Notes: a model not told the origin generated them from the sequence alone. A DNA stretch of 64,000 nucleotides from Octopus sinensis (GCF_006345805.1 NC_042999.1:129766001-129830000); one strand, 5' to 3'. Positions 2,545-59,572 are shown, numbered from the stretch's first letter. Translations and numbers: made by a program.

Positions 2545-4109
2545 TGTAGTAAAGATTGTTTGCCAACATAACATGGCAGTCCTGGTTTAGGACTAACGTT
2601 GCTGAAATTTAACCCTAGGAGATGTCATCTCCAGCTGGCGATACACAGATATTGTTTTGAGCTGAGTGGGGGTGCTAGATTCCCTTCTTCGAAAATATAA
2701 GGACACAGATCATGTCGTATAGCCAGCTGGAGATAATGTCTCCCATGGCTAAATTACAGCAACATTAGTCCTAAACAAGGACTGCTATGTTACGAGGGGC
2801 GTTCAATAAGTAATGCCCCTGACCCACTTCCCATAGCAGTAGAGCAACGAAACTTGGCACAGTTATTAGTCTTTTTCTACATAGGAACCACCCAGAGTTA
2901 CGCATTTCTCCCATCATTTGATGCGGCTCTGGAGACCGTTTTTGTAGAAGAACCCAGCTTGGTCCTCCAACCTCAACGTGACTTCAGAAATCAAGGCTGC
3001 ATCATCTGGGAAACGCTTTCCTTTCAAAAACAACTTCATGATTGGGAAGAGGTGAAAATCAGAGGGTGCAAGGTCAGGAAAGTAGGGGGGATGGGGAGGA
3101 ATTCATAGCCATACGCCTGTGCTTCTGATCTGGCGACAAGTGAGTTGTGGACCGGAGCGTTGTCCTGCAGGAGGAGGATGCCTTTGCTGATCTTGCCCCG
3201 CCTCTTGATTTTGATAACTTCTCTTAATTTCCTCAAAAATGAAGCATAATAGGCTCCTGCAATTGTGGTACCCTTTGCCAGGAAATCTGTCATCACTACT
3301 CCGTCCTGGTCCCAGAAGACTGTGAGCATGACCTTGCCAGCGGAAGGCTGCACCCTTGCCTTCTTTGGAGGGGGTGAGTCATGGTGCCTCCACTGCATTG
3401 ACTGGGATTTGGTCTCTGGATCATCGTGATAGACCCAGGTTTCATGCTGTGTAATCAGTCTGTTGAAAAATTTTGACTCATCTTCTTGGCACATCTCCAA
3501 ATTCACCCTCGAGCACTCGACGCGTTCTTGCTTCTGGAAAGGCGTGACCAACCTGGGAATCCATCTGGCAGACACCTTTTGCATATGCAAATGGTCATGA
3601 ATGATAGTTTCCACAGACCCGGTACTAATCTTGACCTCATGGGCTATTTGGCGAATAATTATGCGTCGATCTTCCAAAATGGCAGCCTCAACTTGACGGA
3701 CAGATGCCTCATCAATGGCAGAAGGGGGTGACCAGATCTGGGAGCTGTTTCCACAGAGTTCCGATCCTGTTTGAATTCACGATGCCAGCGTTTTACAAGG
3801 TCATATGATGGGGCATCATCACCATAAGTTACTTTTATTTCATCAAAAGTCTCCCGTGGTGTGCGTCCTTTCAAATACAAAAACCGGATCACTGCTCGAC
3901 ACTCAACAGGCTCCATTTCACACTTGACTTGGTTCAAACACCTGTAAATCAGAAACCAGAATTAATTCAGAGCTGTAATTTGCCACTTACTCTATAGAGA
4001 TATAAATGATTGCACATGCAAAATTTCAGCTAGATCAAACAACTACAAGTGGGTCAGAGGCATTACTTATTGAACGTCCCTCGTATGTTGGCAAACAATC
4101 TTTACTACA
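2545..4109. mobile_element. Foldback MITE with roughly 100-bp inverted arms, right arm interrupted by the mariner
   Basis: 2545-2645 is the reverse complement of 2713-2792 joined to 4086-4109. A second uninterrupted partial copy lies at about 4291-4500. Confidence 0.75.
2793..4083 (-). mobile_element. Mariner (DD34D) DNA transposon, full length, frameshifted transposase
   Basis: Roughly 37-bp TIRs (CGAGGG.CGTTCAATAAGTAATGCC) flanked by TA. ORFs 3659-3937 and 3036-3677 carry KVSARWIPR, HETWVY, KVMLTVFWD and QDNAPVH motifs. Confidence 0.95.
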
Positions 4110-6030: not shown

Positions 6031-6059
6031 CTATTATTATGATAATGATTATTATTATT

Positions 6060-6100
<41 letters not shown>

Positions 6101-6107
6101 TATCATT

Positions 6108-6142
<35 letters not shown>

Positions 6143-6770
6143 TATTATTATTATTATTATTCAGGTTTTTTATGTGAAGTCATTAAATCTTAGTGCTGTT
6201 TGTATGTATGTATGTATGTATGTTTGTATGTATGTATGTATGTATGTATGTATGTATGTATGTATGTATCTATGTATGTATGTATGTGTATGTGTGTGTA
6301 TGCTTGTGTGTATGTTTGTGTGCATGTGTGTGTATGTGCACGTGTGTGCATGCATGCATGGATATGTATGCATGCACTTACGTACATACATTAAGTATAT
6401 TTGAGCATGTCTAGATATGCAATTTATGAATGAGAAGACATACATAAAACAAAACATACAAATCTGCATGTATGCATGCATACATACGTATGCACATACA
6501 TACATACATACATACATACAAACAAAAAGACCCTGTTGTTGATGTTGAAATTACAATGAAAGAGCCTTGGATCTAAGTTAGAAACTGGCTCTTTCTCTAT
6601 TGACAAGAAATCTTGAAATAAAACTGAATAATGACATACATATATACATACATATATACTTACAGATACACATACATACATACATACATACATACATACA
6701 TACATACATACATACATACGTGTGTACATACACACACACACATACACACACACACATACACACACTCAAT
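6031..6770. repeat. Microsatellite cluster: (ATC/ATT)n, (TATG)n and (CATA)n
   Basis: Directly visible; it explains the poly-M/I and MYVC/HTYI ORFs. Confidence 0.97.
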
Positions 6771-7170
6771 ACAGAAACTTCCTTCCAAAAGGTTCATGTC
6801 ATTCCGTTTCTAAGTTTTTTTTAAATAGTTAATAATTTTTAAGAAAATCCTTCTTCAAATATTATGATTGTATATGTATTTTTAGGGGGCAAAGACTTTA
6901 ATATATATATATATATATATAGGGAGAATTCACATAAAAACAAAAGACAAAGACAGGTGATGTAGACAACAAACAGATGTATTAGTTTAACACTCAGGAA
7001 GTGAAAAAGTCTTTAGCGTTTCGAGCCTATGCTCTTCTACAGAAAGAAACACACAAAGAAACAAGGAGGAAAAATAAAGAATGTCTATTGGCTAGCATTC
7101 TATGATGGCATATGCCAGACAGAGGGGTCACACAGGAGAGCTAGGAAGAAGGGGAGATAATAAAGTAGTG

Positions 7171-8875: not shown

Positions 8876-9700
8876 GGTGAGGTAGAATATGTGATTACCA
8901 CCTTAGATAGTTAAACTATACAGGGAAGGGTTTTAGCCAATGACTGGTATAGCAGTATCATCATAAACTACTACAAAAGAAAAGGAAATGCCTTTAGGGA
9001 GAGGAAATTATAAGGCTATGGATCAAGTTCTGAAGATTGAGGAAAGAGTTGTAGCACAGATGATCTCTGACAGAATAGATCTAGATGAGATGCAGTTTGA
9101 CTTTGGACTTAAAAGAGGTACCATGGATGCAATCCTCCTAGTGGGGTAGCTGAAGGGGAAATACTTGGCTAAGAACAAACCACTGTACCTGGCATTTGTT
9201 GATTTGGAGAAGATGTTTGACAGAGTACCACAATCAGTAATTTGGTAGTCACTAAAAAAACTAGGTGTAGATGAATGGCTTATGAGGACTGTACAAGCTA
9301 TGTACAAAGATGCAATAAATATAGTAAGAATCAACAATGCTTTCAAGGATGAATCTAGCATGAAGATAGGAGTCCACCAAGATTCAGTCTTCAGTCTTCT
9401 CCTATTCATTCTACAAGCCATCACAGATGAGGTTCAGACTGTTGTCCATGGGAACTCCTATTTGCTGATGATTTAGTTCTCTTAGCTGAACATATACAAA
9501 AATTAAAGAAGAAATTCAAAGCATGGAAACTAAACCTAGAATTGAGAGGCCTCAAAGTAAATTTAACGAAGATGAAGGTTTTAGTAAGTAGGAAACATGG
9601 GAGGACTTCAGTATCTTCAGGAAAATGGACTTGCTTGATATGCAGGAAAAGAGTAGGTATAAACTCCAAACACTGTACTCAATGTAAACCATAGACACAA
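8876..9700 (+). mobile_element. RTE-clade LINE reverse-transcriptase fragment
   Basis: FVDLEKMFDRVP, GVHQDSV and GCPWELLFADDL-like remnants with stops and frameshifts. Confidence 0.85.
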
Positions 9701-16320: not shown

Positions 16321-16619
16321 GTAAGTGGTACTGAAATGACACTTGAAGTATTTTTATTTTATTACATTGACAATGATTGATGGTACCATTATTTGTTTAA
16401 TTGTTATTTTATATTCTTTTATTTGTTTCAGTCATTTGACTATGGGCCATGCTGAAGTACTGCCCTGAAGAGTTTTAATCAAATGAATTCACCCCCAAGA
16501 CTTATTTTTTTAAAGCCTAGTACTTATTCTGTCAGTCTCTTGCCAAACCACAAGATTACAGGAAAGTAAACACACCAACCACTGGTTGTTAAGTGGTGAT
16601 GGGGGAATAAACACAGATA

Positions 16620-16725
<106 letters not shown>

Positions 16726-17719
16726 CACACACATGCACACACAACTAGCTTCTTTCAGTTTCTGTTTACCAAAACCACTCATAAGTCTTTGGTTGGCCCG
16801 AGGCTATAGTAGAAGACACTTGCCTAAGGTGCCATGCAGTGACAGAACCCAGAACCATGTGGTTGGGAAGCAAGCCTCTTACCACACAGAGGACTAGTCA
16901 AATACATCCCAGTATGTATTGGGGAATCTTTCTATGCTATTTTAACTGCAACCAGGAAAGTAAAGGATTAATTGATAATCAGGGCTGGTTTTAACCAATA
17001 AGATAGATTTGTTCAAATTGGACCCCATGCACATGCTTGAGAGGAGGACACTATGATGAAGTTTTAGCATATCATTGTGGCTAATGCTGGAACTGATGCA
17101 CTGCACAAAGCATAAGACATTAATCTTCATCTTTTGTAGAATAGAGGCTCCCATTGACATTTCTCTAATTGAACCCCACAATACCTAGTGCCAGCCCTGT
17201 TGATAATAACTTGTGCATGCTCCTTGCAATGTACACCTCCACTGCAGAGTCATCATTCTTTCATTAATCATTTTGGTATAGGTTAACATTTTCAGTAATC
17301 TTCTTTATTCCTCCAGTCATCTTATATATCTTCAGTCATCTTAGATAGTTCATTCGTATTTAAAACATATCCAAATTAGATTTTGTGGCATTCATGCATA
17401 CTAGTGATATATGTGAAATAGAATAGCCACAATTGATAATTAAAACTGGTTCAATTACCTCTGTTCTACTGTGCTTTCTACTCTCCATTTTTAGAATATT
17501 GAAACAAAATGAAACCAAGATAGTCAGAATTGTTGTCAAAGTTTAGATAAGTTTGTCTGTTCAAACTACACCAGTGTTTGAGTTAAACCCAGTCATGTCA
17601 TTCAATAAAAGAATAGTCATTGGCTGTATAGTAATTATATTACAGTGAGCTGCACCTTCTCATAATACCTCTTTGTGTTATCAATTTATCTGTCACAGTT
17701 GACAATGACAAAGAACATC

Positions 17720-28419: not shown

Positions 28420-30050
28420 TAGGATGGTATTACTACCTTTTTCTGGCTGGCTACCAACGCACAATAATAAGGATGCAGTTGTGCATCGGCAGCCAGCTGG
28501 AAAAGATGTTTCCCTGGGGCTAAAAATGGTAGTAACATCTTCATAATCAGGACTGTCACTTTACATTGGCAAATAGACTTTACTCTGCATATATACATAT
28601 AGACTACCCTACAAAACACCCTAACCAAAAATTACCAGTACTAGATACAGAACTCTGGCTGGAAAGTGTAAATAATAAAACCCAAATCCTCCATTCACAC
28701 TATGCAAAACCTATGGCCTCCAAATACCTGATCCACCAGAACTCAGCTATCACAGACAATGCCAAATTCAATATATTGATGGCAGACCTCATCAGAGTAA
28801 TGAGAAATGTGTCCTGCATGTGCAACCCTACAGAGTTAAAGAGACACATTCAACACTTCGTTCATTGTATGCAGTTCTCAAGATACAGCCATAAAGAAAG
28901 GATCAGAGTATATAAAGGAGCCATGAGGAAATTTGAAACTATCATACATAACAATAGGAATGGGATTTGCCCACTTTGTAGGAGCAAGTCATGGAATACC
29001 ATTGAAAGGACTAAGAAGAAAATAGAGAATGCCAATTCATGGTATGATAGCCACAAATACCAGAGTGTCATGTTCATTGACACCACCCCTAGAGGCAAAT
29101 TGGCGTACTGCTTTAGAAGAGCCCTTGACAAAATTAAGGTTGTAGAAAGGCCAGGTAACCCTATCAAATCCCTAATCGGTAGAACCTACTCTTTTAATAG
29201 AACCCCCTGCACTGATAGGAACTGTATTGTATGTAGATTTAGCCCACGAACAAACTGTAAAGCTAGGAATGTAGTCTATAGTTTAAGATGTACAGAGGGA
29301 CGGTGCAGAAATAAGACAATGACATATATAGGGGAGACAGCATGGAGCATAGGAAAGAGGGTAAATGAGCATTGGAGGGAACTTAAGGAAGAGAAGGGCT
29401 CATCAGTTCTTTACCAGCATGCCGAGTGGGAACACGGCCACTCACTCAACAACATAGAAGTTAAAACCTTGTCCACACATAGAATGGACACAACACTTAG
29501 ACAAATTACGGAAGCCTAAATAGAAAGCTAGAATGGAATATTAGCACACACCCCCCACACACAACAACCTATGACAGAATAAGATACTCATAAACTAATA
29601 ATAATATGAAACTAATACAATAGACAGGTAAATAAATGGAATTAAATAATTATATACATAAACAAAATATAATAAATTAAATTAAATTGATACAAAAAAG
29701 AAAGAAACAAAAAAGTAAGTAGATAAAAACAAATGAATAAAATAAAAGTAAATTAAACAAACTTGAATAAACAGGGGGTACTGATAATGCAGGTACTATA
29801 CACATTCCTACACACACACTTGCTAAACATAGACACACAGAGGGATATACGCAAACGCAAATACAACAGGAGTACAAAATGGCAGATCATTAGGAAGGAG
29901 AGACACAAAAAAGAAAGAAAGCAAAGGACCACTGATGAGGTCACAGAAGTGAGATGAAAGAACTCTGGCCGAAATACAATTAATATGAGATAAAGCTGAA
30001 GCAAGTGAATATCAAATATATAGTGTGTGTGTTTTTATTGGTTAAACTGA
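28420..30050 (+). mobile_element. Penelope-like retroelement, 5'-truncated, with RT C-terminus, GIY-YIG endonuclease and 3' pLTR-like region
   Basis: ORF 28566-29519 has DYPTKHPNQKLPVLD, NVVYSLRC and YIGETAWSIGKRVNEH. A hammerhead core follows at 29932. Confidence 0.9.
29928..29988 (+). ncRNA. Hammerhead core in the Penelope pLTR, partly decayed
   Basis: CUGAUGA-GGUCA...UGGCC-GAAA is intact, but stems I and III are degenerate. Confidence 0.5.
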
Positions 30051-32915: not shown

Positions 32916-34155
32916 TTGGGTTGGCAAGAAAGTAATTTCGTTTTTCACTAATAGATAGAGTTACGATGCTTTTGTATGACTTTTGTCAATGTTATGATTT
33001 TTTCCTTTTGACATTTGATAGCTGTTATTTCTAGTTTACTTTAGAAGCAAATTGCATGCAATTTTGTTTACAGTTGTTAGTTCAGTGTCACTTTTAAAAT
33101 CAAGTGCAAAAAAGAACATTTTCACCATATTTTGCTTTTTTATTTCCATAAAGGCAAAAGAAGCTGCTGAGGCTCACAAAGAGACATGTGAAGTTTATGG
33201 TGTTGATTGCTTAACAGAACACACATGTCAGAAGTGGTTTTTAAAATTCTGTTCTATTCAATCTACTGAAGCTGATGTTGACCAAATCAAAGCCTGATTG
33301 TCATATAACTGTGCAAAAGATTGCAGAGAGGCTAACTGTACCATACACAGCAATTGAAAATCACTTAGACTTAAGAAGCTCAATATTTGGGTTCCACATA
33401 AATTGAAACCCAATGAATCAATATTTATGCATCTCATATCGCAATGAATCAATATTTACGATACACATCTCAAATGCAATGAAATTAACCTGTTTTTGGA
33501 ATGAATCATCACTGGTGATGAAAAATGGATTGTCTACAAAAACATTAATCAAAAAGATCATGGTCCAAACATAATGAACCAACACAAACCACATGGAAAG
33601 CTGAATTGCATCAAAAACAGGTCATGCTGTCAATTTGATGGGATTATAAAGATGTTGTGTATTTTGAGTTGCTTCTAAGGAACCAAACAATCAATTCAGA
33701 TGTTTACTGTGAACAACTAATGAAACTGGAGTAAGCAATCAAAGAAAAACGGCCAGAATTGGCAAATTGTAAAGGAAGTGTGTTCCACCATGACAATGCT
33801 GGACCACACACATCTTTGCTAACTCATGAAAGATTATTGGAGCTGGGTTGGGAAGTGATGTCACATCTACCATACAGCCCTGACTTTGCACCATCAGATT
33901 ACCATTTATTTCAAAGTTTGCAAAATTCTTTGAATGGTAAAACTTTCTATAATGATGATGACCTGAAATCGTACTTTCTTCAGTTTTTGGCTGATAAGAA
34001 GTATTATGAGTGTGGAATCATGAAATTGCCAGAAAGATGGCAAAAGGTCATCAAATAAAATGAAAAATATATAATTGATTAAAGTTCATTCTTTGTATGA
34101 AAAAATTACTTTTATTTCACACTAAAACACCGAAATTACTTTCTTGCTACCTCAA
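32916..34155 (+). mobile_element. Mariner transposon, decayed (Hsmar1-like TIR)
   Basis: TIRs TTGGGTTGGCAAGAAAGTAATTTCG / CGAAATTACTTTCTTGCTACCTCAA flanked by TA. HDNAGPH and YSPDFAPSDYHLF motifs in ORF 33759-34058. Confidence 0.92.
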
Positions 34156-41879: not shown

Positions 41880-43560
41880 TATTGGATCAGGTGATGAAAG
41901 TTACAGAGAGGGTCAGAGCTCAACTAATTAGGAAGAGAGTCTAGATGAGATGCAGTTCAGTTTTGTGTCAGGCAGAAGCACTACTGATACTATATTTCTG
42001 GTGAAGCAACTTTTGTACTTGACTTTTATTAACTTGGAGAAAGTCTTTGACAGGGTCCCCCAATCTCTTATCTGATGGTCATTGCAGAAACTGGAAATAA
42101 ATGAGTGGCTGTAAGAGCTGTACAAGCTCTGTACTGGGACGCTGTCAGTAAGGTGAAGTTTGGCAATGAGTATAGTGAAGAATTCTGAGTAGAAGTAGGG
42201 GTTCACCAAGGATCAGTCCTCAGCCCCCTCTTATTCATTGTAGTCCTCCAGGCAATAACAGAGGAATTCAAGACAGGCTGCCTCTGGGAACTCCTCTATG
42301 CTGATGACCTTGCTCTAATAGCCAAGTCACTGCCAGAATTGGAGACGAACTTTAGGGTGTGGAAGCAAGGTCTAGAATCGAAGGGCCTTAGGGTTAACCT
42401 AGCCAAAAGCAAAGTCTTAGTAAGTAGGAAGGCTGTCAAATCACAACACCCTTCAGGTAGATGGTCCTACTCGATCTGTAGAAAAGGTGTGGATAGAAAC
42501 TTCATACGATGTACTCAGTGTAAGCTATGGACACATAAGAGGTGCAGCAATATCAAAGGAAGGTTAAACGGGAAAATAGTTTTTGTGTGTGGCAGATGCA
42601 CTGGGGCAATAAACACTGAAGATGTACAGAAAACATCGCAACTAAAGGGCTTTCACTCAGGGTGAAAGATAGACTGTATGATGCATATGTGCAAACTGCT
42701 ATGCTAAACAGCAGTGAAACATGGGCCGTGAATGCTGAGGACATGCGTAGGCTTAAAAGAAATCAAGCTTTTTTGATCCACTGAGTGTAAGCACCCTGAG
42801 AGAAAAGTTGGGCATAAGAAGCATCAAATGTGGTGTGCAAGAAAGGTGACTGCGCTGGTATGGCCATGTGTTACATATGAATGAAAGCAGCTGTGTGAGG
42901 ATGTGCCACTCCCTCACTGTAGAAGGAACCTGTAGAAGAGGTAGACCCAGGAAGACATGGGATGAGGTGGTGAAGCATGACCTTCAAACATTGGGCCTCA
43001 CAGAGGCAATGACAGGAGACCAAGATCTTTGGAGATACGCTGTGATTGAGAAGACCCAGCAACTAAAGTGAGATGGCAGCCACACATGTCCAGCCCTGTT
43101 AAAAATACTCCTGGTGCATCAGGCGATATGATATGCTTGAGAAGACCTGTTGAGTCAAGTAAAACCAATATCGTAACTAGGGTCAGTGATCCCTGGCTGG
43201 CTCCTGTGCCATTGGCACATAAAAAGTACCATCCAAATGTGTTCGTTGCCAGGTCCGCCTGGCTCCAGTGCTTGTGGCATGTAAAAAGCACCAACCGATC
43301 GTGACCGACACCAGTACCCCTGTACTGGTGACATGTAAAAAGTACCATCCTAACATGATCATTGCCAAGCCCACCTTACTGGCTCTTGTGCTAGTAGCAC
43401 GTAAAAAGCACCCACTACACTCTTGGAGTTGTTGGTATTAGGAAGGGCATCCAGCTGTAGAAACTCTACCAGACCAGATTGGAGCCTGGTGCAGCCACTG
43501 GCTCTTCAGACCTCAGTCAAACCATCCAACCCATGCCAGCATGGAAAACGGATGTTAATT
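41880..43560 (+). mobile_element. RTE LINE 3' portion with repetitive 3' UTR
   Basis: VGVHQGSVLSPLLF, LWELLYADDLAL and GRPRKTWDEVV motifs, followed by GGCACGTAAAAAGCACC-type tail repeats. Confidence 0.9.
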
Positions 43561-44227: not shown

Positions 44228-44603
44228 CCATTTCATTGCAAAATTAAATTTCATGTTTATTCCAGTAATGATGTTAAACATCTACCAAAAAATAGAATTT
44301 ATATTTTTTGCAAGCCATATTGCTTCAGTAAACTTGACATATATCAACAGAAAATAGTTTCAATCTTGACATTCTTTAACAAAAGATAGATTGGTATATA
44401 AAATTGGTTTCTGCTGTTAAGAGTAATGAAATTTGTAGTAAATATATCTGCTTTCTGCATTCCAAACTGATATTTTAAATCTCAATTTTATTTTATTTTC
44501 TGTATACAATTTTTATAACATCAAAGAAAAAAGTGGTTTATTTTGATGTATGAATGTTTACCTTCTTTAGAAGTACTTTTTTCAGTTTATTTTTCTCTTT
44601 CAG

Positions 44604-44693
44604 GTATGTGGACGTTTTTCATCCAGTGCTCTAGGCCAGAGTACTCAAGAAGATATTTATGAACTCTCAGAGATTATTGATTCTGATGTTTAA
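44604..44693 (+). CDS. CCDC162: CCDC162-like probable terminal coding exon (VCGRFSSSALGQSTQEDIYELSEIIDSDV*)
   Basis: Long pyrimidine tract with CAG, phase 0, TAA at 44691-44693, AATAAA at 44812 and 44853. Exons 2012-44693 sum to a whole number of codons. Confidence 0.72.
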   Translation, partial: VCGRFSSSALGQSTQEDIYELSEIIDSDV

Positions 44694-44900
44694 CAATGCT
44701 ATTTATATTATCCTTATTTTTCATTGATAGCTGTAGCAAATATCTATCTTATTTGCATGTTTCAATGGATCTGAAATATTACTTGACTTCTTAAAATAGG
44801 ATAGAACATGAAATAAAGTTAATAATAGTTAAATGCATAGATTATCTTAGAAAATAAAAGTTAAATATCTAGGTTATCTTACAGAAAAAAACATTGTCTG

Positions 44901-45743
44901 AAATCAACATCGTATAATTTTAAACAAACATTGAATACTATTTTAAAATTACTTGAATGAGTTTTCTATCCTTTTAAATTAATTTCCATTTTGATAGGAT
45001 TTCATTTTATTAGTTTTGAAGCCTAACAATAGCTTTTATTCATTTAGATTTTATTTTTCAGTTTCTATAAGTTATCACTTTTTGCTCTTATCTCTAGTTT
45101 CTTCTTATCTATTTCCAAAGCATGTTCTTCAATAACTTTTAGCAACAATTTCCTGGTTATTTATGTCATTAATAGATTTACCTTCATCACTTGCCACCAA
45201 TTTCATTGACATCTTCCTGCCTTACTGTAAATACAATTATATTTGCTAACACTTTCATAACTGACAGTTACTAATGGTATGTCTACCATCCTTAAACTGA
45301 CTGTTGTTAGTAAAGAGTGTTAATAAGCTAAACTGCAAGCAAATTATTATCAATGATAATGAAATAAATTTTAATGAAAATTCATTAGTAACTGTCAGTT
45401 ATGAAAGTGTTAGCAAATATAATTGTATTTACAGTAAGGCAGGAAGATGTCAATGAAATTGGTGGCAAGTGATGAAGGTAAATCTATTAATGACATTAAT
45501 AACCAGGAAATAGTTGCTAAAAATTATTGAAGAAGGTGCTTTGGAAATAGCTAAGAAGTAAGAAACTAAAAATAAAAGTAAAAGGTGATAACTTATAGAA
45601 ACTGAAAAATAAAATCTAAATGAATAAAAGCTATTGTTAAGCTTCAAAACTGATAATGGAAATTATTTTAAAGGATAGAAAACTCATTCAAGTAATTTTA
45701 AAATACTATTTAATGTTTGTTTAAAATTACACACTGTTGATTT
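44901..45743. repeat. Long inverted repeat (arms 44901-45276 and 45383-45743, 106-nt spacer)
   Basis: Direct base-by-base comparison. The inner 114 bp pair perfectly and the outer arms have scattered mismatches plus indels. Confidence 0.97.
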
Positions 45744-46591
45744 AAAATAGGATAGGTCATGAAATAGAGTTAATGATACTTGAAGTAGATGCTTTTATGT
45801 TATCTAATACTGTGACTCAGTTTACAAATTTTGTCCATCCCTGGAATATATGAAATAAGTACCAGCAATATACTATGGTGGAAATCCTCAAGTGTAATGT
45901 AGAAGGGTCCTTATGATTAGTCAAAATAATCACTATAATTTGAGGAGCTGATGATGTTACTATATGTTTTGTAGCAGCAACTTCACAGCTGGCCATTCAT
46001 ATATAATTTCAACATGCAAGAAATCATATCACTTTTGGACCATTTACACTAATATTCTACTAGAAACTAGTGCAATGAAATACTCCTAAATACCTTAGAA
46101 AAACTATATCAGTTCTTTGCTCACACAAACTATACTAGTTATTGGAAACATGTATAAATATAAAATCTTTATTCTTAAATTGATGCTTCTATTTTAAATT
46201 CATAAAATTAAATAAAACATTTCCTAATGTTTAATCTAAGATTGAATGAAGAATACATTAATTGGATGGAAACTCAAAAAGACTTATTTGGCACTTCATT
46301 AGGTGTATACTCATTTTTGCTTGTGTGTCATTCAGGTCATTTGAGTTTGCCTCTTTATTTTAATAAAATTATTTCCAGTAAAACCAGAGAATTTGTTCAT
46401 CTTTCTAAAATTATAATTTTAAAGTTATGTAAACATGTCTTTTTCTTTAATTTAATGGGTTTTTTTTTTGGGGGGGGGGGTATGGTGATGACACAATATG
46501 TAATGAAACTTACCTATAGATAAAATAGTGTTTCAACAATATAAGAGGAAATACATTAAGGTGTGTTGTTATATGTGAATACTTTAAATAA

Positions 46592-47160
46592 TCACCATTT
46601 CAGCTTAACCTTCACTTCATTTCTTTGTTCATCTTGTCTTGGTTTCAAAACTCTTTTGTTACTTTTAGTGTACATTTTCCACTTAAGAAATAATTGTTGT
46701 ACATGTGAAAGAATAAGCTTCTCTGTATTCTGTCTCTGCAGTTGCTTTTCAAAAGATTCTGATACAGGTCTTTTCATCCTTGATAGTTGAATATTAGAAA
46801 TACCAATTCTGTTTTTATCTTCTTTTTGTTGTTTAGATGTTTGATTATTAGGTAAAGTTTGTTTCTTCACTGGGGTGACAGTTTTCTGTTTACGGAGGTC
46901 AAGTAACATAGATTCATCTTGTAATTTTAGCAGAAAATATTTAAAAATAGAACTCGAATCAGTTATTGGACAGCGGTGAGCATACAGTAATAACCTAAAA
47001 TAGGCAGCATTCTGAAAATGTTCATTGCTTTGTAACCCATTGTTGGTTTTCTTCAGAAATAAGTCTTCATGACGTTTTTCTAAGACCATAAGATGTGACG
47101 TCCGTGTTGTGATTGCAGTCTCTATATATGTCCCTAGACCAAGACAGTGTTCTATTAAAC
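46592..47160 (-). CDS. CNBD-like probable terminal coding exon (GLIEHCLGLGTYIETAI...VKVKLKW*)
   Basis: atttttag acceptor in phase 1, within the 241-aa ORF. It completes the second CNB domain and adds a basic low-complexity tail. A further short 3' exon cannot be excluded. Confidence 0.8.
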
Positions 47161-48334
47161 CTAAAAATAAATTATTTTCAAGATTAGTTATTACTCCAAC
47201 CCCATAAATGATTATGATTTTGGAACAACATTGTAGGTGTTCCTGATACAGAATAATATTCCTCTTAGCCTTCTCCACAGCTTTTACAAAGATTTGAGCC
47301 AGCACAGTAACTAACAAAACATTTGTTAATTATACTGTACATCAGCTACTTACTTAAGTGAACAGTATCTCATTATTACGGGGAATGAACTGCAAAGAGT
47401 TAAGTGCTTTGAGAAGAAACACAGTGCAGTACAGTACCTGAAATAAAATATCAACTGTTGAATTTAAGTAAAGCAACAAGACTAAGCCAGCTGTTTTCAC
47501 TCTATCATTCAATGTGATAATTAGAATATTTGAAATATACAATGTCATTTACATTATTAAGAATAACTTGATTGCCTTCAAAACTGATTTTTTTTTTTTT
47601 TCCGTAAGGCCAAAACTTGTGTTTATTTAAGAAATCACTTAATATGAATAATATGATAAGAAATTTTCCTAATCCAATGTGTGTTTTGATTCTGAAAAAT
47701 ATATTTTATTAAAAATAAACAGAAGAATTAACTAGGATATCAATAAGAATAAAACATTTCCATGACTTTAAAAAAATGATTATGTCTGTTTTTTAAAATA
47801 CATTTTCTATTTTGAAATTTTAGTTTAGGTTTTTTTTTAATCTTTTATGTTTTCTTTTACTTGTTTCAGTCATTTGACTGTGGCCATGCTGGGGCATCAC
47901 CCTGAACTGTTTAATCAAACTTATTGACCCTAGTACTTCTTTTTAAACCTAGCACTTATTATATTGGTCTCTTTGACTAAATCATTAAGTTACAGTGAAG
48001 TAAACAAACCAACACTGATTGTCAAGCAATGGGGGTGAGAAACTCAAAGACATGCCTTGCTCATAAAGGCCAGTTTCCTGGTTTTATTGGCATTTAGGTT
48101 CCACACCTGGATGGGGCACCAATCTGTCGCAGGTGAACTGCTAGATGCAGGAGGAAAGAGTGAGAGAAAGCTGTTGCAAAAGAGTCAGCAGAAGTTCACT
48201 ATTACTTTCTGCCAGAGCTGTGTGGAGCTTAGGTGTTTTGCTCATAAATACACACATCACCCAGTTTGAGATTTGAACCTGCAATCTCTCGACCACAAGT
48301 CCACTGCTCTAACCACTAGACCATGTGCCTCCAC

Positions 48335-48337
48335 ACA

Positions 48338-48381
<44 letters not shown>

Positions 48382-48393
48382 ATGTGTGTGTGC

Positions 48394-48467
<74 letters not shown>

Positions 48468-48492
48468 ATGTATGTATGTATATATATATATA
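48335..48492. repeat. (TA)n/(TG)n/(TATG)n microsatellite
   Basis: Directly visible. Confidence 0.95.
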
Positions 48493-49075
48493 CAAAATAA
48501 GAAAATGGAGAAATACATCTTAATCAATAATCAACTACCAGATAATACCCAATCACATAATTTATTAAACCACTACATATGAACATTAAGGTCAAACATA
48601 ATAATATAGAACAAAACAATGTACATCAATGAGTAATAAGATACAATAAGTACAGTATGTATAAGTGAATATAAATAAATACAAATATGAATATAAACTA
48701 CATCTTACAGCTGTTTTAATATAAAATGAGATAATGGACTCTCCTGTCATTAGATGACTATGAGGGTTCTGTAATTTCTTTCTGGACAACCAAACAAATG
48801 ATTTGTTTATAGTGATCAAATGCTTGTGCACACATAAGCTTACTTCCGACATCAAATTAACATTACCTGTACAGGTGCATGACATACCACATGTCAGATG
48901 GTGAAATGATCACAGAGCAATGTGTAATGAAGTGTTCTGCTCAAGAATACAACACAGCACTCAGTCAAGGAATTGAAACCACAATCTTGCAATTGTGAGT
49001 GCAACATCCTATGAGCTTCCAGACAGCTTCTGTTTACTTCTAAGCCACACAGCCATACCTGCATCTATTAATAAC

Positions 49076-55423: not shown

Positions 55424-56579
55424 CTTTAGATGATCTGTGTTTTTAACATCATGTGTCACCAATTCAGCTGTGTAAAGAGACTTTGAGACACACCGTGTTT
55501 TGGCTTCATTGTGTGCCCCTGAAATGAAGCAGCCCTATGGTCAGACCAATGAATCATACAGGAGCACGAGTTCTTATTTATAACAATTAGCAAAACAGCT
55601 ATTTGCTGATGTTTACTGATGTTTTGACAAACAGATATTAATTAACTATCAGCAACCAAAGAAGTGCTTGTAATGAATTATAATTGGATGTGTTGTTTAG
55701 AATGTGTTTAACTGCCGTAAATATCCAGAGATACTATCTCATGTGCTAATTAAGCACCAACTATATTGGCTGATGAAATGATTATCTGCACCGTTACAGT
55801 AGTTTAAAATATTCTAAACAAGAGATCCAATTTAGGATGGTTGTGCTAATTATTAGATATTAATTCACGGGGTACATATATAACAGCGAGAATCCAAACA
55901 ATAACATATCTATTCGTTCTATTCATTCATTTACCCCATGAATTATTGTCTTCCATCTAAAATTGTGTATTTACTATCAATGATAGGAAAAAAGACATGA
56001 AAATGCTACTATAGAAGTTGATGAATGAAAAGGATGGTGGAATAGGGAAGTATAACCCTAACTGAAACAACCACAGGGATCAGCTATCAAGCTTAGTTTC
56101 AATATAGTTGATAAGATTATTAAGGAAACTAAAGGAAAATATCAGGTCCATCAGATACCCTGATAGTATTAACATCGGTTAGATGTAGGCCATAGGTGGT
56201 GCAATGAGTTATTCCAAGATTGATGTAGTATTATCAACATTAACTGTTACACAAGAGAACAGGATAATTAAATTTGCTTTAATCAACAGCCAAATCTCTC
56301 TCCATACACACCCTACCATCTTCAAAAGAAAGACACATCAGATAATATAGTCTTAAAACACTGTGCCAGAAAAGAAAAATGGGATGGTAGCAACTGGATC
56401 ACAGGTCTGATCAACAGGATTGACATGGGATGAACCTACTGCTGGAGCATAGGGAAGGGAAATAGTTACAAACACCAGGAACTCTCATAACTCAAAAAGT
56501 TATTGCTTTGTTAGCAACCAGCTTGAACTCTCTTAAGAACTTAAATTAATCTCAAAGAACAATCATTCATTTGTTCACT

Positions 56580-56785
56580 CATTCATACGTACATACATAT
56601 GTACATACATACAACATACATACGTACATACATACACACATACGTACACACATACATATATGCACATATATATGTACATGCATACGTACATGCATACACA
56701 CATACATACGTACATACATACGTACATACATACATACATACATGCATGCATACGTACATACATGCATACATACATACATACATAT
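56580..56785. repeat. (CATA)n microsatellite
   Basis: Directly visible. Confidence 0.95.
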
Positions 56786-56944
56786 GACATGCTTTTGTGG
56801 CATTTCAATCAAACCACATTGCACTTGCAAAGCATCGAGCAATCGAAGGCAGCCGTAGAGGACACTAAAGCATCACAAAATGAGATCAAATGCAGAACCA
56901 AATTATTGTAAAGTAATGCATATTCAGATGTTTATAAAACTTAC

Positions 56945-58719: not shown

Positions 58720-59572
58720 TGAGGTGGTATCAAAAAGTTCCTAAACTAGTTCTGTAGGATGCCAACAGATGGCAGCACATGGTTGCAAGCATAGTGAGAG
58801 CTAGCAGTGACCATGAGGCAGTGTGCCAAGTGACATTGTTGTGTTTACTTTGCAAGTTGTGAAATTTGTGTTTTTGTAAACATTTGTGCTGTAGTAAGCG
58901 ATTTTGTTATGGACAGGAACAAAAAGCCAGCATAAAATTTTGTGTTAAACTTGGAAAGTTGTACACAATGTTTCAAGTGGCATGGGTGTTTCAAAAATGG
59001 AAGAACATCTCTGGAAGACGATGAGTGATCTAGAAGATCTGCCACAAGTGTCACCCCAAGAAATGTGGTATTTTGCATTGAGAATTCATCCCCCAAGGCC
59101 AGACCATCAATCAAGAGTTCTACCATGACATTTTAAAGCATTTGAGGAAGGACATTTGGCCAAAGCAACTGGATCTGTGGAACACGAATGATTGGATTCT
59201 TCACAACAATGCATCTAGTCACTGTGCTCTCCTCACTCGCGAGTTTCTTACCAAAACCATGGTATAGCATCTGCACTTGCCCTATTCACCAGATTTTGCA
59301 CCAGTGGACTGCCATCTCTACTCCAAGATGAAAATGCAGCTTAAAGGTCACTGTTTTAATACCATTGTCGGGATCCAGAGTGAACCGCAGAAGGCCCTTG
59401 ACTCACTAACAGGAAACAACTTCCAAGTTGGATTCTAAAAGTGGCAGGAATGCTGGAACCAGAGTATTGCTGCACAAGATGACTATTTCAAAGGTGATGA
59501 TGTTAAAACTTAGGTAAATAAGTTATTTTCTATTAAACATAGCTAATTTGGGAACTTTTTCATACTCTCTCG
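58720..59572 (+). mobile_element. Mariner transposon, internally deleted and decayed
   Basis: Degenerate TIRs (GTAT.AAAAAGTTCC) and a C-terminal CIAAQDDYFKGD remnant. Confidence 0.8.

What the first reader, a model, noticed from the sequence alone, without database searches (positions are those of the whole stretch)
44785..45784. Roughly 370-bp inverted duplication with a 114-bp perfect stem between two converging gene ends
Seen: arms 44901-45276 and 45383-45743 are reverse complements around a 106-nt spacer. The loop-proximal 114 bp (45383-45496 and partner) pair perfectly, while the outer arms carry mismatches and indels. A roughly 43-bp block upstream of the left arm (44791-44833) recurs in direct orientation right after the right arm (45742-45784), which fits a template-switch inverted duplication. 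I found no other copy in the window and no TSD. The repeat lies about 200 nt after the CCDC162-like stop and about 850 nt after the CNBD-like stop, so a long 3' UTR or read-through from either strand would fold into a long dsRNA hairpin. Established: such hairpins are ADAR substrates and endo-siRNA/hpRNA precursors, and coleoid cephalopods edit RNA heavily. Inference: this may be a locus-specific hairpin RNA shared by, or regulating, both genes. The identity gradient suggests selection or arm-to-arm conversion. Caveat: AATAAA at 44812 and 44853 could end the + mRNA before the hairpin.
Basis: partly seen in the sequence, partly recalled or inferred. Interest (0 to 1): 0.72.

Follow-up and report, generated by a model that had tools for sequence, protein, structure and literature searches.

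The report
Inverted duplication between two octopus genes
An 843-bp near-palindrome really does sit in the AT-rich gap between two converging octopus genes, but it looks like an ordinary, fairly young DNA-copying accident, and nothing obtainable here shows that it acts as a regulatory hairpin RNA.

Summary
The arms are 44901-45276 and 45383-45743, with a 106-nt spacer. They align with 338 matches, 19 mismatches and 3 indels. The loop-proximal 114 bp are perfect. A 43-bp direct repeat (37/43) lies 67 bp upstream of the left arm and abuts the right arm.

The window holds no second copy. I found no target-site duplication, tRNA-like part, Rfam family or coding origin, and no relative in any searchable public collection. 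The outer ends are the most diverged part, which is the opposite of transposon terminal repeats. The mismatches look neutral: 12 transitions to 7 transversions, no G·U bias for either strand, and both strands fold equally well (-503 and -505 kcal/mol).

The best reading is a lineage-specific inverted duplication made by template switching or fold-back repair. A later arm-to-arm re-copying made the inner stem perfect (p about 0.0002-0.004).

Canonical poly(A) signals for both genes lie before the hairpin, so a dsRNA needs read-through or a long 3'UTR isoform. Published surveys report no dedicated endo-siRNA pathway in molluscs and find 3'UTR and intron hairpins to be routine ADAR substrates in octopus.

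Transcription, genome-wide copy number and the orthologous locus could not be tested. Interest is low.

The parts
44901..45276 (.). Left arm of the inverted duplication (376 nt)
   Evidence: reverse complement of 45383-45743, with 338 matches, 19 mismatches and 3 indels
45277..45382 (.). Unique 106-nt spacer (loop), with small palindromes at both arm/loop junctions (45273-45288 and 45372-45387)
   Evidence: not similar to a SMRTbell adapter (adapter sequence recalled from memory)
45383..45743 (.). Right arm of the inverted duplication (361 nt)
45163..45276 (.). Perfect 114-bp block of the left arm, pairing with 45383-45496
   Evidence: clean-run p = 0.0002 at the loop end and 0.004 anywhere
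45383..45496 (.). Perfect 114-bp block of the right arm
45079..45162 (.). Cluster of differences (12 events in 84 bp, 14%) directly next to the perfect block; candidate boundary of a conversion or template-switch tract
44791..44833 (+). Direct repeat copy 1 (43 bp), 67 bp upstream of the left arm
   Evidence: 37/43 identical to 45742-45784, E 2e-8; extension not significant
45742..45784 (+). Direct repeat copy 2, abutting the outer end of the right arm with a 2-nt overlap
44821..44881 (+). 32-bp tandem duplication (1.9 copies, 82%) between direct repeat copy 1 and the left arm
44604..44694 (+).
   Evidence: polypyrimidine tract and AG before 44604, open frame to the stop at 44692-44694; no homology test was possible
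44812..44858 (+). Two AATAAA signals (44812, 44853) that could end the + strand mRNA before the left arm
46592..47161 (-). Last coding exon and stop of the cyclic-nucleotide-binding-domain gene
   Evidence: transcript L002 aligns to 46910-47161; the ORF at 46592-47317 is 96% identical to O. bimaculoides A0A0L8HKM0
46168..46359 (-). AATAAA signals on the - strand (46354-46359 and 46168-46173), about 240 and 420 nt after the stop and more than 400 nt before the right arm
   Evidence: the related transcript L002 carries at least 413 nt after its stop

Best explanation
This is a genuine, lineage-specific inverted duplication in AT-rich (about 27% G+C) intergenic or distal 3'UTR DNA of an Octopus species close to O. 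bimaculoides.

The most likely history is as follows. The ancestral order was D - X - A - spacer - downstream. During replication or break repair, the growing strand switched to the complementary template at the inner end of A. It copied A backwards, producing the right arm. It then switched again and copied 43 bp of the nearby D in direct orientation. Finally it returned to the downstream sequence. This pattern is a serial template switch with templated insertions (MMBIR or fold-back type).

The two arms then drifted apart neutrally, reaching about 8% in the outer 243 aligned bp. A later intra-hairpin template switch or gene conversion re-copied the loop-proximal 114 bp from one arm to the other. 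That made the inner stem perfect and left a sharp boundary next to a mismatch cluster.

The element has no demonstrated function. If read-through or a long 3'UTR isoform of either gene covers it, the RNA would fold into a stem of about 340 bp and would be an ordinary hyper-editing substrate for ADAR.

Shown: the structure, the statistics, the absence of transposon and RNA-family hallmarks, and the neutral-looking substitutions. Inferred: the order of events, the mechanism, and the lack of function.
For: - Structure and significance of the repeat.
- The window holds no other copy at any sensitivity tried.
- No target-site duplication, no tRNA-like part and no Rfam family, including ribozymes and miRNA families, at gathering scores.
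- No protein-coding origin and no related called ORF among 5.8 billion proteins or 1.84 billion representatives.
- A 24-mer from the perfect stem is absent from the JGI metagenome collection and the GTDB genome collection.
- The outer ends are the most diverged part, with 3 mismatches within 14 nt of the tip, and the inner end is perfect. This is the reverse of what transposase-bound terminal repeats show.
- The gradient is significant.
- Divergence of the direct repeat (6/43) does not differ from that of the outer arms (19/243; Fisher p = 0.24), so one event can account for both.
- A 32-bp tandem duplication lies next door, marking a slippage-prone stretch.
- Substitutions look neutral, with 12 transitions to 7 transversions and no G·U bias for either strand. 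The two strands fold equally well.
- The literature shows that template switching creates perfect reverse-complement stems and converts several mismatches at once (PMC8794818). It also shows that template switching extends identity between the arms of quasi-palindromes (PMC3820800, abstract).
Against: - No outgroup sequence of this intergenic region could be obtained, so the ancestral state, the polarity (which arm is the copy) and the order of events are not demonstrated.
- Genome-wide copy number is unknown, because only 64 kb of this genome could be searched.
- No microhomology is visible at the spacer/right-arm junction, and only 2 nt (TT) at the arm/direct-repeat junction. That is trivial in AT-rich DNA (read).
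- Documented short template-switch events are mostly under 60 bp (PMC8794818). A 361-bp copy and a 114-bp re-copy are at the large end and closer to fold-back or MMBIR events.
- The direct orientation of the 43-bp repeat needs an extra switch.
Confidence: 0.58

Rival explanations
1. The repeat is transposon-derived. It could be a low-copy non-autonomous DNA element with long terminal inverted repeats (a foldback-like element or long-TIR MITE). Alternatively, two copies of an uncharacterised octopus repeat may have inserted head to head.
For: Octopus genomes are repeat-rich, and this window is full of SINE, mariner and retroelement remnants. Arms of about 370 bp around a short spacer resemble deleted Tc1-type or foldback elements (general knowledge). 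Only 64 kb of the genome could be searched, so dispersed copies cannot be excluded.
Against: The window has no second copy even at 65-70% identity. No target-site duplication exists. The termini do not match the CAGT/TA (Tc1) or CCC/TTAA (piggyBac) conventions (read; the conventions are recalled from memory). The outer tips are the least conserved part. No transposase remnant or any coding similarity appears in six frames. No internal subrepeats typical of foldback arms were found. No related ORF exists in public assemblies of other octopods, although this last point is weak.
Confidence: 0.2
2. The repeat is a selected hairpin-RNA locus. The inverted repeat would be transcribed, either as a long 3'UTR or read-through of one neighbour or from its own promoter. 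Its long dsRNA would act as an ADAR substrate or sponge, or as a small-RNA precursor regulating the neighbouring genes. The perfect inner stem would be kept by selection.
For: Either strand forms an extremely stable stem of about 340 bp. The perfect 114 bp is non-random. Octopus 3'UTRs are unusually long, and editing concentrates in 3'UTR and intron hairpins (PMC9699675). The convergent genes lie only 1.9 kb apart, stop to stop.
Against: No transcription data are available. Poly(A) signals for both genes precede the hairpin. The arms have no similarity to any other sequence in the window, so no target is visible. The substitution pattern is neutral and favours neither strand. No Rfam family matches; the best hit is MIR7996 at 25.5 bits against a 119-bit cut-off. 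Molluscs, including O. bimaculoides, show no dedicated endo-siRNA pathway (PMC12479628). A perfect inner stem is also what non-selective template switching or conversion produces (PMC8794818).
Confidence: 0.08
3. The repeat is an assembly artefact, produced when a chimeric fold-back long read was built into the consensus.
For: Inverted duplications with short spacers are a known artefact class of long-read libraries (general knowledge). No read data were available to check this one.
Against: The arms differ by 19 substitutions with a transition bias, plus indels of 18 and 4 bp that are not homopolymer errors. Arms copied from a single molecule and then polished would be expected to be essentially identical, not to differ like this (general knowledge). 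The spacer is 106 nt of unique AT-rich sequence and does not match a SMRTbell adapter (adapter recalled from memory). The window has no Ns. The 43-bp direct repeat and the neighbouring tandem duplication indicate real local rearrangement.
Confidence: 0.07

Closest known systems
Template-switch mutations and quasi-palindrome correction (Loytynoja & Goldman four-point model; PMC5453318, PMC8794818, PMC3820800)
   Same: A reverse-complement copy of adjacent sequence creates a stem in one event. A later switch between the arms turns several mismatches into perfect pairing. Here the result is a perfect loop-proximal block with a sharp boundary.
   Different: Described events are mostly tens of bp, with the largest about 59 bp in PMC8794818. 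Here the copy is about 361 bp and the re-copied tract is 114 bp. No ancestral reconstruction was possible for this locus.
Fold-back / MMBIR-type inverted duplications with templated insertions (for example ODIRA, PMC10766183; DUP-TRP/INV-DUP rearrangements, general knowledge)
   Same: An inverted copy is separated from its source by a short unique spacer. An extra short templated piece from nearby (the 43-bp direct repeat) sits at the junction. The rearrangement lies in a slippage-prone, AT-rich stretch.
   Different: Those events usually span kilobases to megabases and are studied as copy-number variants. This one is sub-kilobase and fixed in a reference assembly, and its junction microhomology is no longer readable.
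Drosophila hairpin-RNA (hpRNA) loci (PMC10317233, PMC10292708)
   Same: A long inverted repeat of a few hundred bp per arm with a short loop, evolutionarily young and lineage-specific.
   Different: hpRNA arms derive from, and are complementary to, a target gene. They give Dicer-2/AGO2 siRNAs. Here no target similarity was found, no small-RNA data exist, and molluscs are reported to lack a dedicated siRNA pathway.
Inverted-repeat hairpins in 3'UTRs and introns as promiscuous ADAR substrates (inverted Alu pairs in human; 3'UTR and intron hairpins in octopus, PMC9699675)
   Same: If transcribed, a long near-perfect intramolecular duplex lying downstream of a coding region.
   Different: Those hairpins are usually made by two dispersed repeat copies. 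This one appears single-copy in the window, and whether it lies inside any transcript is unknown.
Foldback elements and long-TIR MITEs
   Same: Two long inverted arms around a short non-coding middle.
   Different: This element has no target-site duplication and no second copy in 64 kb. Its tips are less conserved than its inner part, and it has no arm subrepeats.

Membership tests
MITE / foldback DNA transposon | Target-site duplication directly flanking the terminal inverted repeats | tested here: not met
   the best flank match is a shifted 4-mer, AAAT. The 43-bp direct repeat is not adjacent to the left arm; it lies 67 bp away.
MITE / foldback DNA transposon | Multiple dispersed copies in the genome | tested here: inconclusive
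   The 64-kb window has no other copy, and no related called ORF exists in public protein sets. The rest of the genome could not be searched.
MITE / foldback DNA transposon | Best conservation at the outer termini, which are the transposase binding sites | tested here: not met
   mismatches at 44910, 44911 and 44914, close to the tip, while the inner 114 bp are perfect.
Drosophila-type hpRNA / endo-siRNA precursor | Arms complementary to a target gene | tested here: inconclusive
   No similarity to any other sequence in the window, including exons of both neighbours. No coding-derived similarity in six frames. Targets elsewhere in the genome could not be tested.
Drosophila-type hpRNA / endo-siRNA precursor | Transcription of the hairpin and 21-22-nt duplex small RNAs from both arms | not testable with these tools
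   No RNA data for this species could be reached. The literature reports no dedicated endo-siRNA pathway in molluscs (PMC12479628).
ADAR hyper-editing substrate (3'UTR / intron inverted repeat) | Long intramolecular dsRNA | tested here: met
   a stem of about 340 bp at -503 / -505 kcal/mol, z about -48 / -55, including 114 bp of perfect duplex.
ADAR hyper-editing substrate (3'UTR / intron inverted repeat) | Lies inside a transcript and shows A-to-G mismatch clusters against the genomic DNA | not testable with these tools
   Poly(A) signals of both genes precede the arms. No RNA-seq data could be reached.
Template-switch / fold-back inverted duplication | Reverse-complement copy of immediately adjacent sequence with a short spacer, single locus | tested here: met
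Template-switch / fold-back inverted duplication | Ancestral (outgroup) state with only one arm | not testable with these tools
   The orthologous O. bimaculoides locus could not be fetched. The related-species contig L001 ends at window position about 46392, short of the repeat.
Any curated RNA family (Rfam 15) | Score at or above the family's gathering threshold | tested here: not met
   no match at gathering scores. The best sub-threshold hit is MIR7996 at 25.5 bits against 119.

The most novel reading that the evidence does not exclude
The palindrome could be a young, octopus-lineage-specific hairpin-RNA gene placed between two convergent genes. It would be transcribed by read-through. Its perfect 114-bp inner duplex would be actively maintained because it serves as a high-affinity ADAR (or Dicer) substrate that couples the 3'-end processing or expression of both neighbours.
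Probability: 0.05. Interest if true: 0.6.

Novelty: new member of a known kind. Interest (0 to 1): 0.2.

Why it matters
As it stands, this is a clean small example of how replication template switching can build a long RNA-foldable stem in one step and later restore perfect pairing in part of it without selection. That serves as a caution against reading 'perfect stem plus identity gradient' as evidence of function.

If the region were shown to be transcribed and edited, it would be one more 3'-end ADAR substrate in a lineage where such substrates are already abundant. It would become interesting only if it proved conserved with compensatory changes, or if it produced discrete small RNAs in an animal group thought to lack endo-siRNAs.

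Tried and rejected
1. Getting the orthologous locus from other octopods.
- The last-exon ORF of the CNBD-like gene found only two clusters.
- One was a 1,022-bp Logan contig of a third species (L001, 88.5% nt identity). It stops at window position about 46392, 650 bp short of the repeat.
- The other was a distant transcript (L002) whose 3' end has no similarity to the repeat.
- The O. bimaculoides cluster member (P0003, 96% identical) is not on record in the contig index.

2. Finding other copies through called ORFs.
- I searched with the 65-aa arm ORF, a six-frame concatenate of 44400-46420 and HMMER against 1.84 billion representatives.
- All returned nothing. This is weak negative evidence, because AT-rich non-coding ORFs are rarely called as genes.

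3. Exact 24-mer scans of the JGI metagenome and GTDB genome collections found nothing, as expected for animal DNA.

4. Penelope-like or retrozyme idea (hammerhead ribozymes, long target duplications). Rejected, because no ribozyme or any Rfam family was found.

5. SINE idea. Rejected, because there is no tRNA-like part and no poly(A) or simple-repeat tail at either end.

6. Extension of the direct repeat beyond 43 bp. Rejected, because the alignment score fell below the shuffle mean.

7. SMRTbell adapter in the spacer. Rejected (adapter sequence recalled from memory).

8. Searching papers for the two SRA run numbers to name the species found no papers.

Full report
**What is there**

The arms at 44901-45276 and 45383-45743 are reverse complements around a unique 106-nt spacer. 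A global alignment of the left arm against the reverse complement of the right arm gives 338 matches, 19 mismatches and three indels of 1, 18 and 4 bp. The loop-proximal 114 bp (45163-45276 with 45383-45496) are identical, and the first difference is at 45162.

A 43-bp direct repeat (44791-44833 and 45742-45784, 37/43 identical, E 2e-8 against the whole window) lies 67 bp upstream of the left arm and abuts the right arm. An apparent extension of this repeat is not significant. The 67 bp between direct repeat copy 1 and the left arm largely consist of a 32-bp tandem duplication at 44821-44881.

As RNA, either strand folds into one stem of about 340 bp. The + strand gives -503 kcal/mol and the - strand -505 kcal/mol, against about -150 for shuffles.

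**Context**

The window is octopod nuclear DNA. The ORF that holds the last exon of the - strand gene (46592-47317) is 96% identical to Octopus bimaculoides protein A0A0L8HKM0. It is 88.5% identical at the DNA level to a Logan contig of a third species. That gene carries a cyclic-nucleotide-binding domain.

Its stop codon (46592-46594) lies 849 nt from the right arm. The + strand reading frame ends at 44692-44694, 207 nt before the left arm. Its 'CCDC162-like' identity could not be verified.

Canonical poly(A) signals precede the hairpin on both sides. On the + strand they are at 44812 and 44853. On the - strand they are at 46354 and 46168, about 240 and 420 nt after the stop. A related species' transcript has at least 413 nt after its stop. 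The repeat therefore most probably lies between the two main polyadenylation sites. It would be transcribed only by read-through or as part of a long 3'UTR isoform. Such isoforms are plausible in octopus, where 3'UTR length is the outstanding transcriptome feature (PMC9699675).

**Is it a mobile element, an RNA gene or coding?**

No evidence supports any of these.
- The 64-kb window has no second copy by blastn at word sizes 11 and 7 or by nhmmer.
- No target-site duplication appears within +/-8 bp of the ends.
- There is no tRNA-like part.
- Apart from a trivial 6-bp array (45563-45584), there are no internal subrepeats in the arms.
- No Rfam family reaches its gathering score. The best sub-threshold hit is a generic miRNA-precursor model at 25.5 bits against a 119-bit cut-off.
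- The longest arm ORF (65 aa) has no relatives among 5.8 billion proteins or 1.84 billion representatives, and neither does a six-frame concatenate of 44400-46420 among the 5.8 billion.
- A 24-mer of the perfect stem is absent from the metagenome and prokaryote genome collections.

The conservation pattern is the reverse of a transposon's. The outer tips carry three mismatches within 14 nt, while the inner end is perfect.

**The identity gradient**

With 22 difference events over 358 aligned columns, a clean run of 114 at the loop end has p about 0.0002. A clean run of that length anywhere has p about 0.004. Directly beside the perfect block lies the densest cluster of differences, 12 events in 84 bp. 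That pattern looks like the edge of a copied tract rather than a smooth gradient.

The differences themselves look neutral. There are 12 transitions to 7 transversions. Transitions that would be tolerated as G·U number 5 for the + transcript and 7 for the - transcript. The two strands fold equally well. Nothing points to selection on pairing in either transcript.

**Most likely history (inferred)**

The most parsimonious ancestral order is D - X - A - spacer - downstream. A serial template switch during replication or break repair copied A backwards to make the right arm. It then copied 43 bp of the nearby D in direct orientation and returned downstream.

Divergence of the direct repeat (6/43) is compatible with that of the outer arms (19/243; Fisher p = 0.24), so one event can explain both. 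The alternative polarity, with the right arm and D' ancestral, needs an extra 67-bp piece of unknown origin.

Later, an intra-hairpin template switch or gene conversion re-copied 114 bp next to the loop. Published work shows both steps. Template switching creates perfect reverse-complement stems in one event and converts several mismatches at once (PMC8794818; PMC5453318 and PMC3820800). Larger inverted copies arise at replication forks (PMC10766183). The events here are larger than typical short template switches, and junction microhomology is no longer readable, so the mechanism remains an inference.

The outer-arm divergence of about 8% between the two copies is smaller than the 11.5% between the window and the third species over a partly coding stretch. 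That suggests the duplication post-dates the split from that species. This too is inference.

**The functional reading**

The dsRNA potential is real, but nothing available supports the proposed regulation of both genes.
- No target similarity was found.
- No transcription evidence could be obtained.
- Poly(A) signals lie upstream of the arms.
- A survey of 32 molluscs including O. bimaculoides found no evidence for a dedicated endo-siRNA pathway (PMC12479628).
- ADAR editing is likely if the region is transcribed. In O. vulgaris, however, most editing already lies in intron and 3'UTR hairpins (PMC9699675), so this would be an ordinary case.

**Assembly artefact**

This is unlikely but not excluded. 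The arms differ by transition-biased substitutions and by non-homopolymer indels of 18 and 4 bp. The spacer is unique sequence and not an adapter. The window has no Ns. Reads were not available.

**What could not be done**

I could not test genome-wide copy number, the orthologous locus in O. bimaculoides or other octopods, genomic long reads, RNA-seq or small RNAs. The only neighbouring contig from another species ends 650 bp short of the repeat, and the O. bimaculoides protein is not in the contig index.

**Verdict**

The proposed template-switch origin is plausible and favoured. The regulatory hairpin RNA idea is untested and disfavoured by context. This is a new instance of a known kind of rearrangement and is of low interest unless transcription, conservation or small RNAs are shown.

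Noticed in passing
window 44821-44881: A 32-bp tandem duplication (1.9 copies, 82% identity) overlaps the end of direct repeat copy 1 and fills much of the gap to the left arm. It suggests a locally slippage-prone stretch.
   Followed up: partly
window 45273-45288 and 45372-45387: Small palindromes sit exactly at both arm/spacer junctions (ATGGTAtgtcTACCAT and TAATGAAaaTTCATTA). They might be relics of the switch points or chance in AT-rich DNA.
   Followed up: no
L001 965-1022, against window about 46392: The related-species Logan contig leaves homology with the window about 200 nt into the CNBD-like 3'UTR and runs into SINE-like sequence. This is either a lineage-specific repeat insertion or a contig break at a repeat.
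   Followed up: no
window 46592-47317 (-): The ORF holding the last exon of the cNMP-binding-domain gene is 96% identical to O. bimaculoides A0A0L8HKM0 but not identical. The window therefore comes from a close relative of O. bimaculoides. The third species (L001) has a premature stop relative to both, ending in ...KSNN.
   Followed up: partly
window 3036-3937 (-): A Mos1/mariner transposase remnant split over two ORFs (Pfam Transposase_1 E 2e-23; HTH_48 E 1e-9). ORFs at 33759-34058 and 59277-59438 have mariner-like motifs but gave no Pfam hit or were not tested.
   Followed up: partly
window 42339-42665 (+): An ORF with a PHD-finger match (E 7e-6) inside what looks like retroelement-derived sequence. 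Similar ORFs lie near 9542-9694.
   Followed up: no
window 28566-29519 (+): The longest ORF in the window (317 aa, cysteine-rich C-terminal part) has no Pfam match. It is probably an uncharacterised mobile-element protein.
   Followed up: partly
window 6039-6824, 16510-16782, 48273-48582, 56571-56911: Long microsatellite and short-tandem-repeat tracts (TG/CA-rich and ATAC-type) produce spurious ORFs and the other long 'inverted repeats' in the window (6197-6764). They are simple-repeat artefacts and not comparable to the finding.
   Followed up: no
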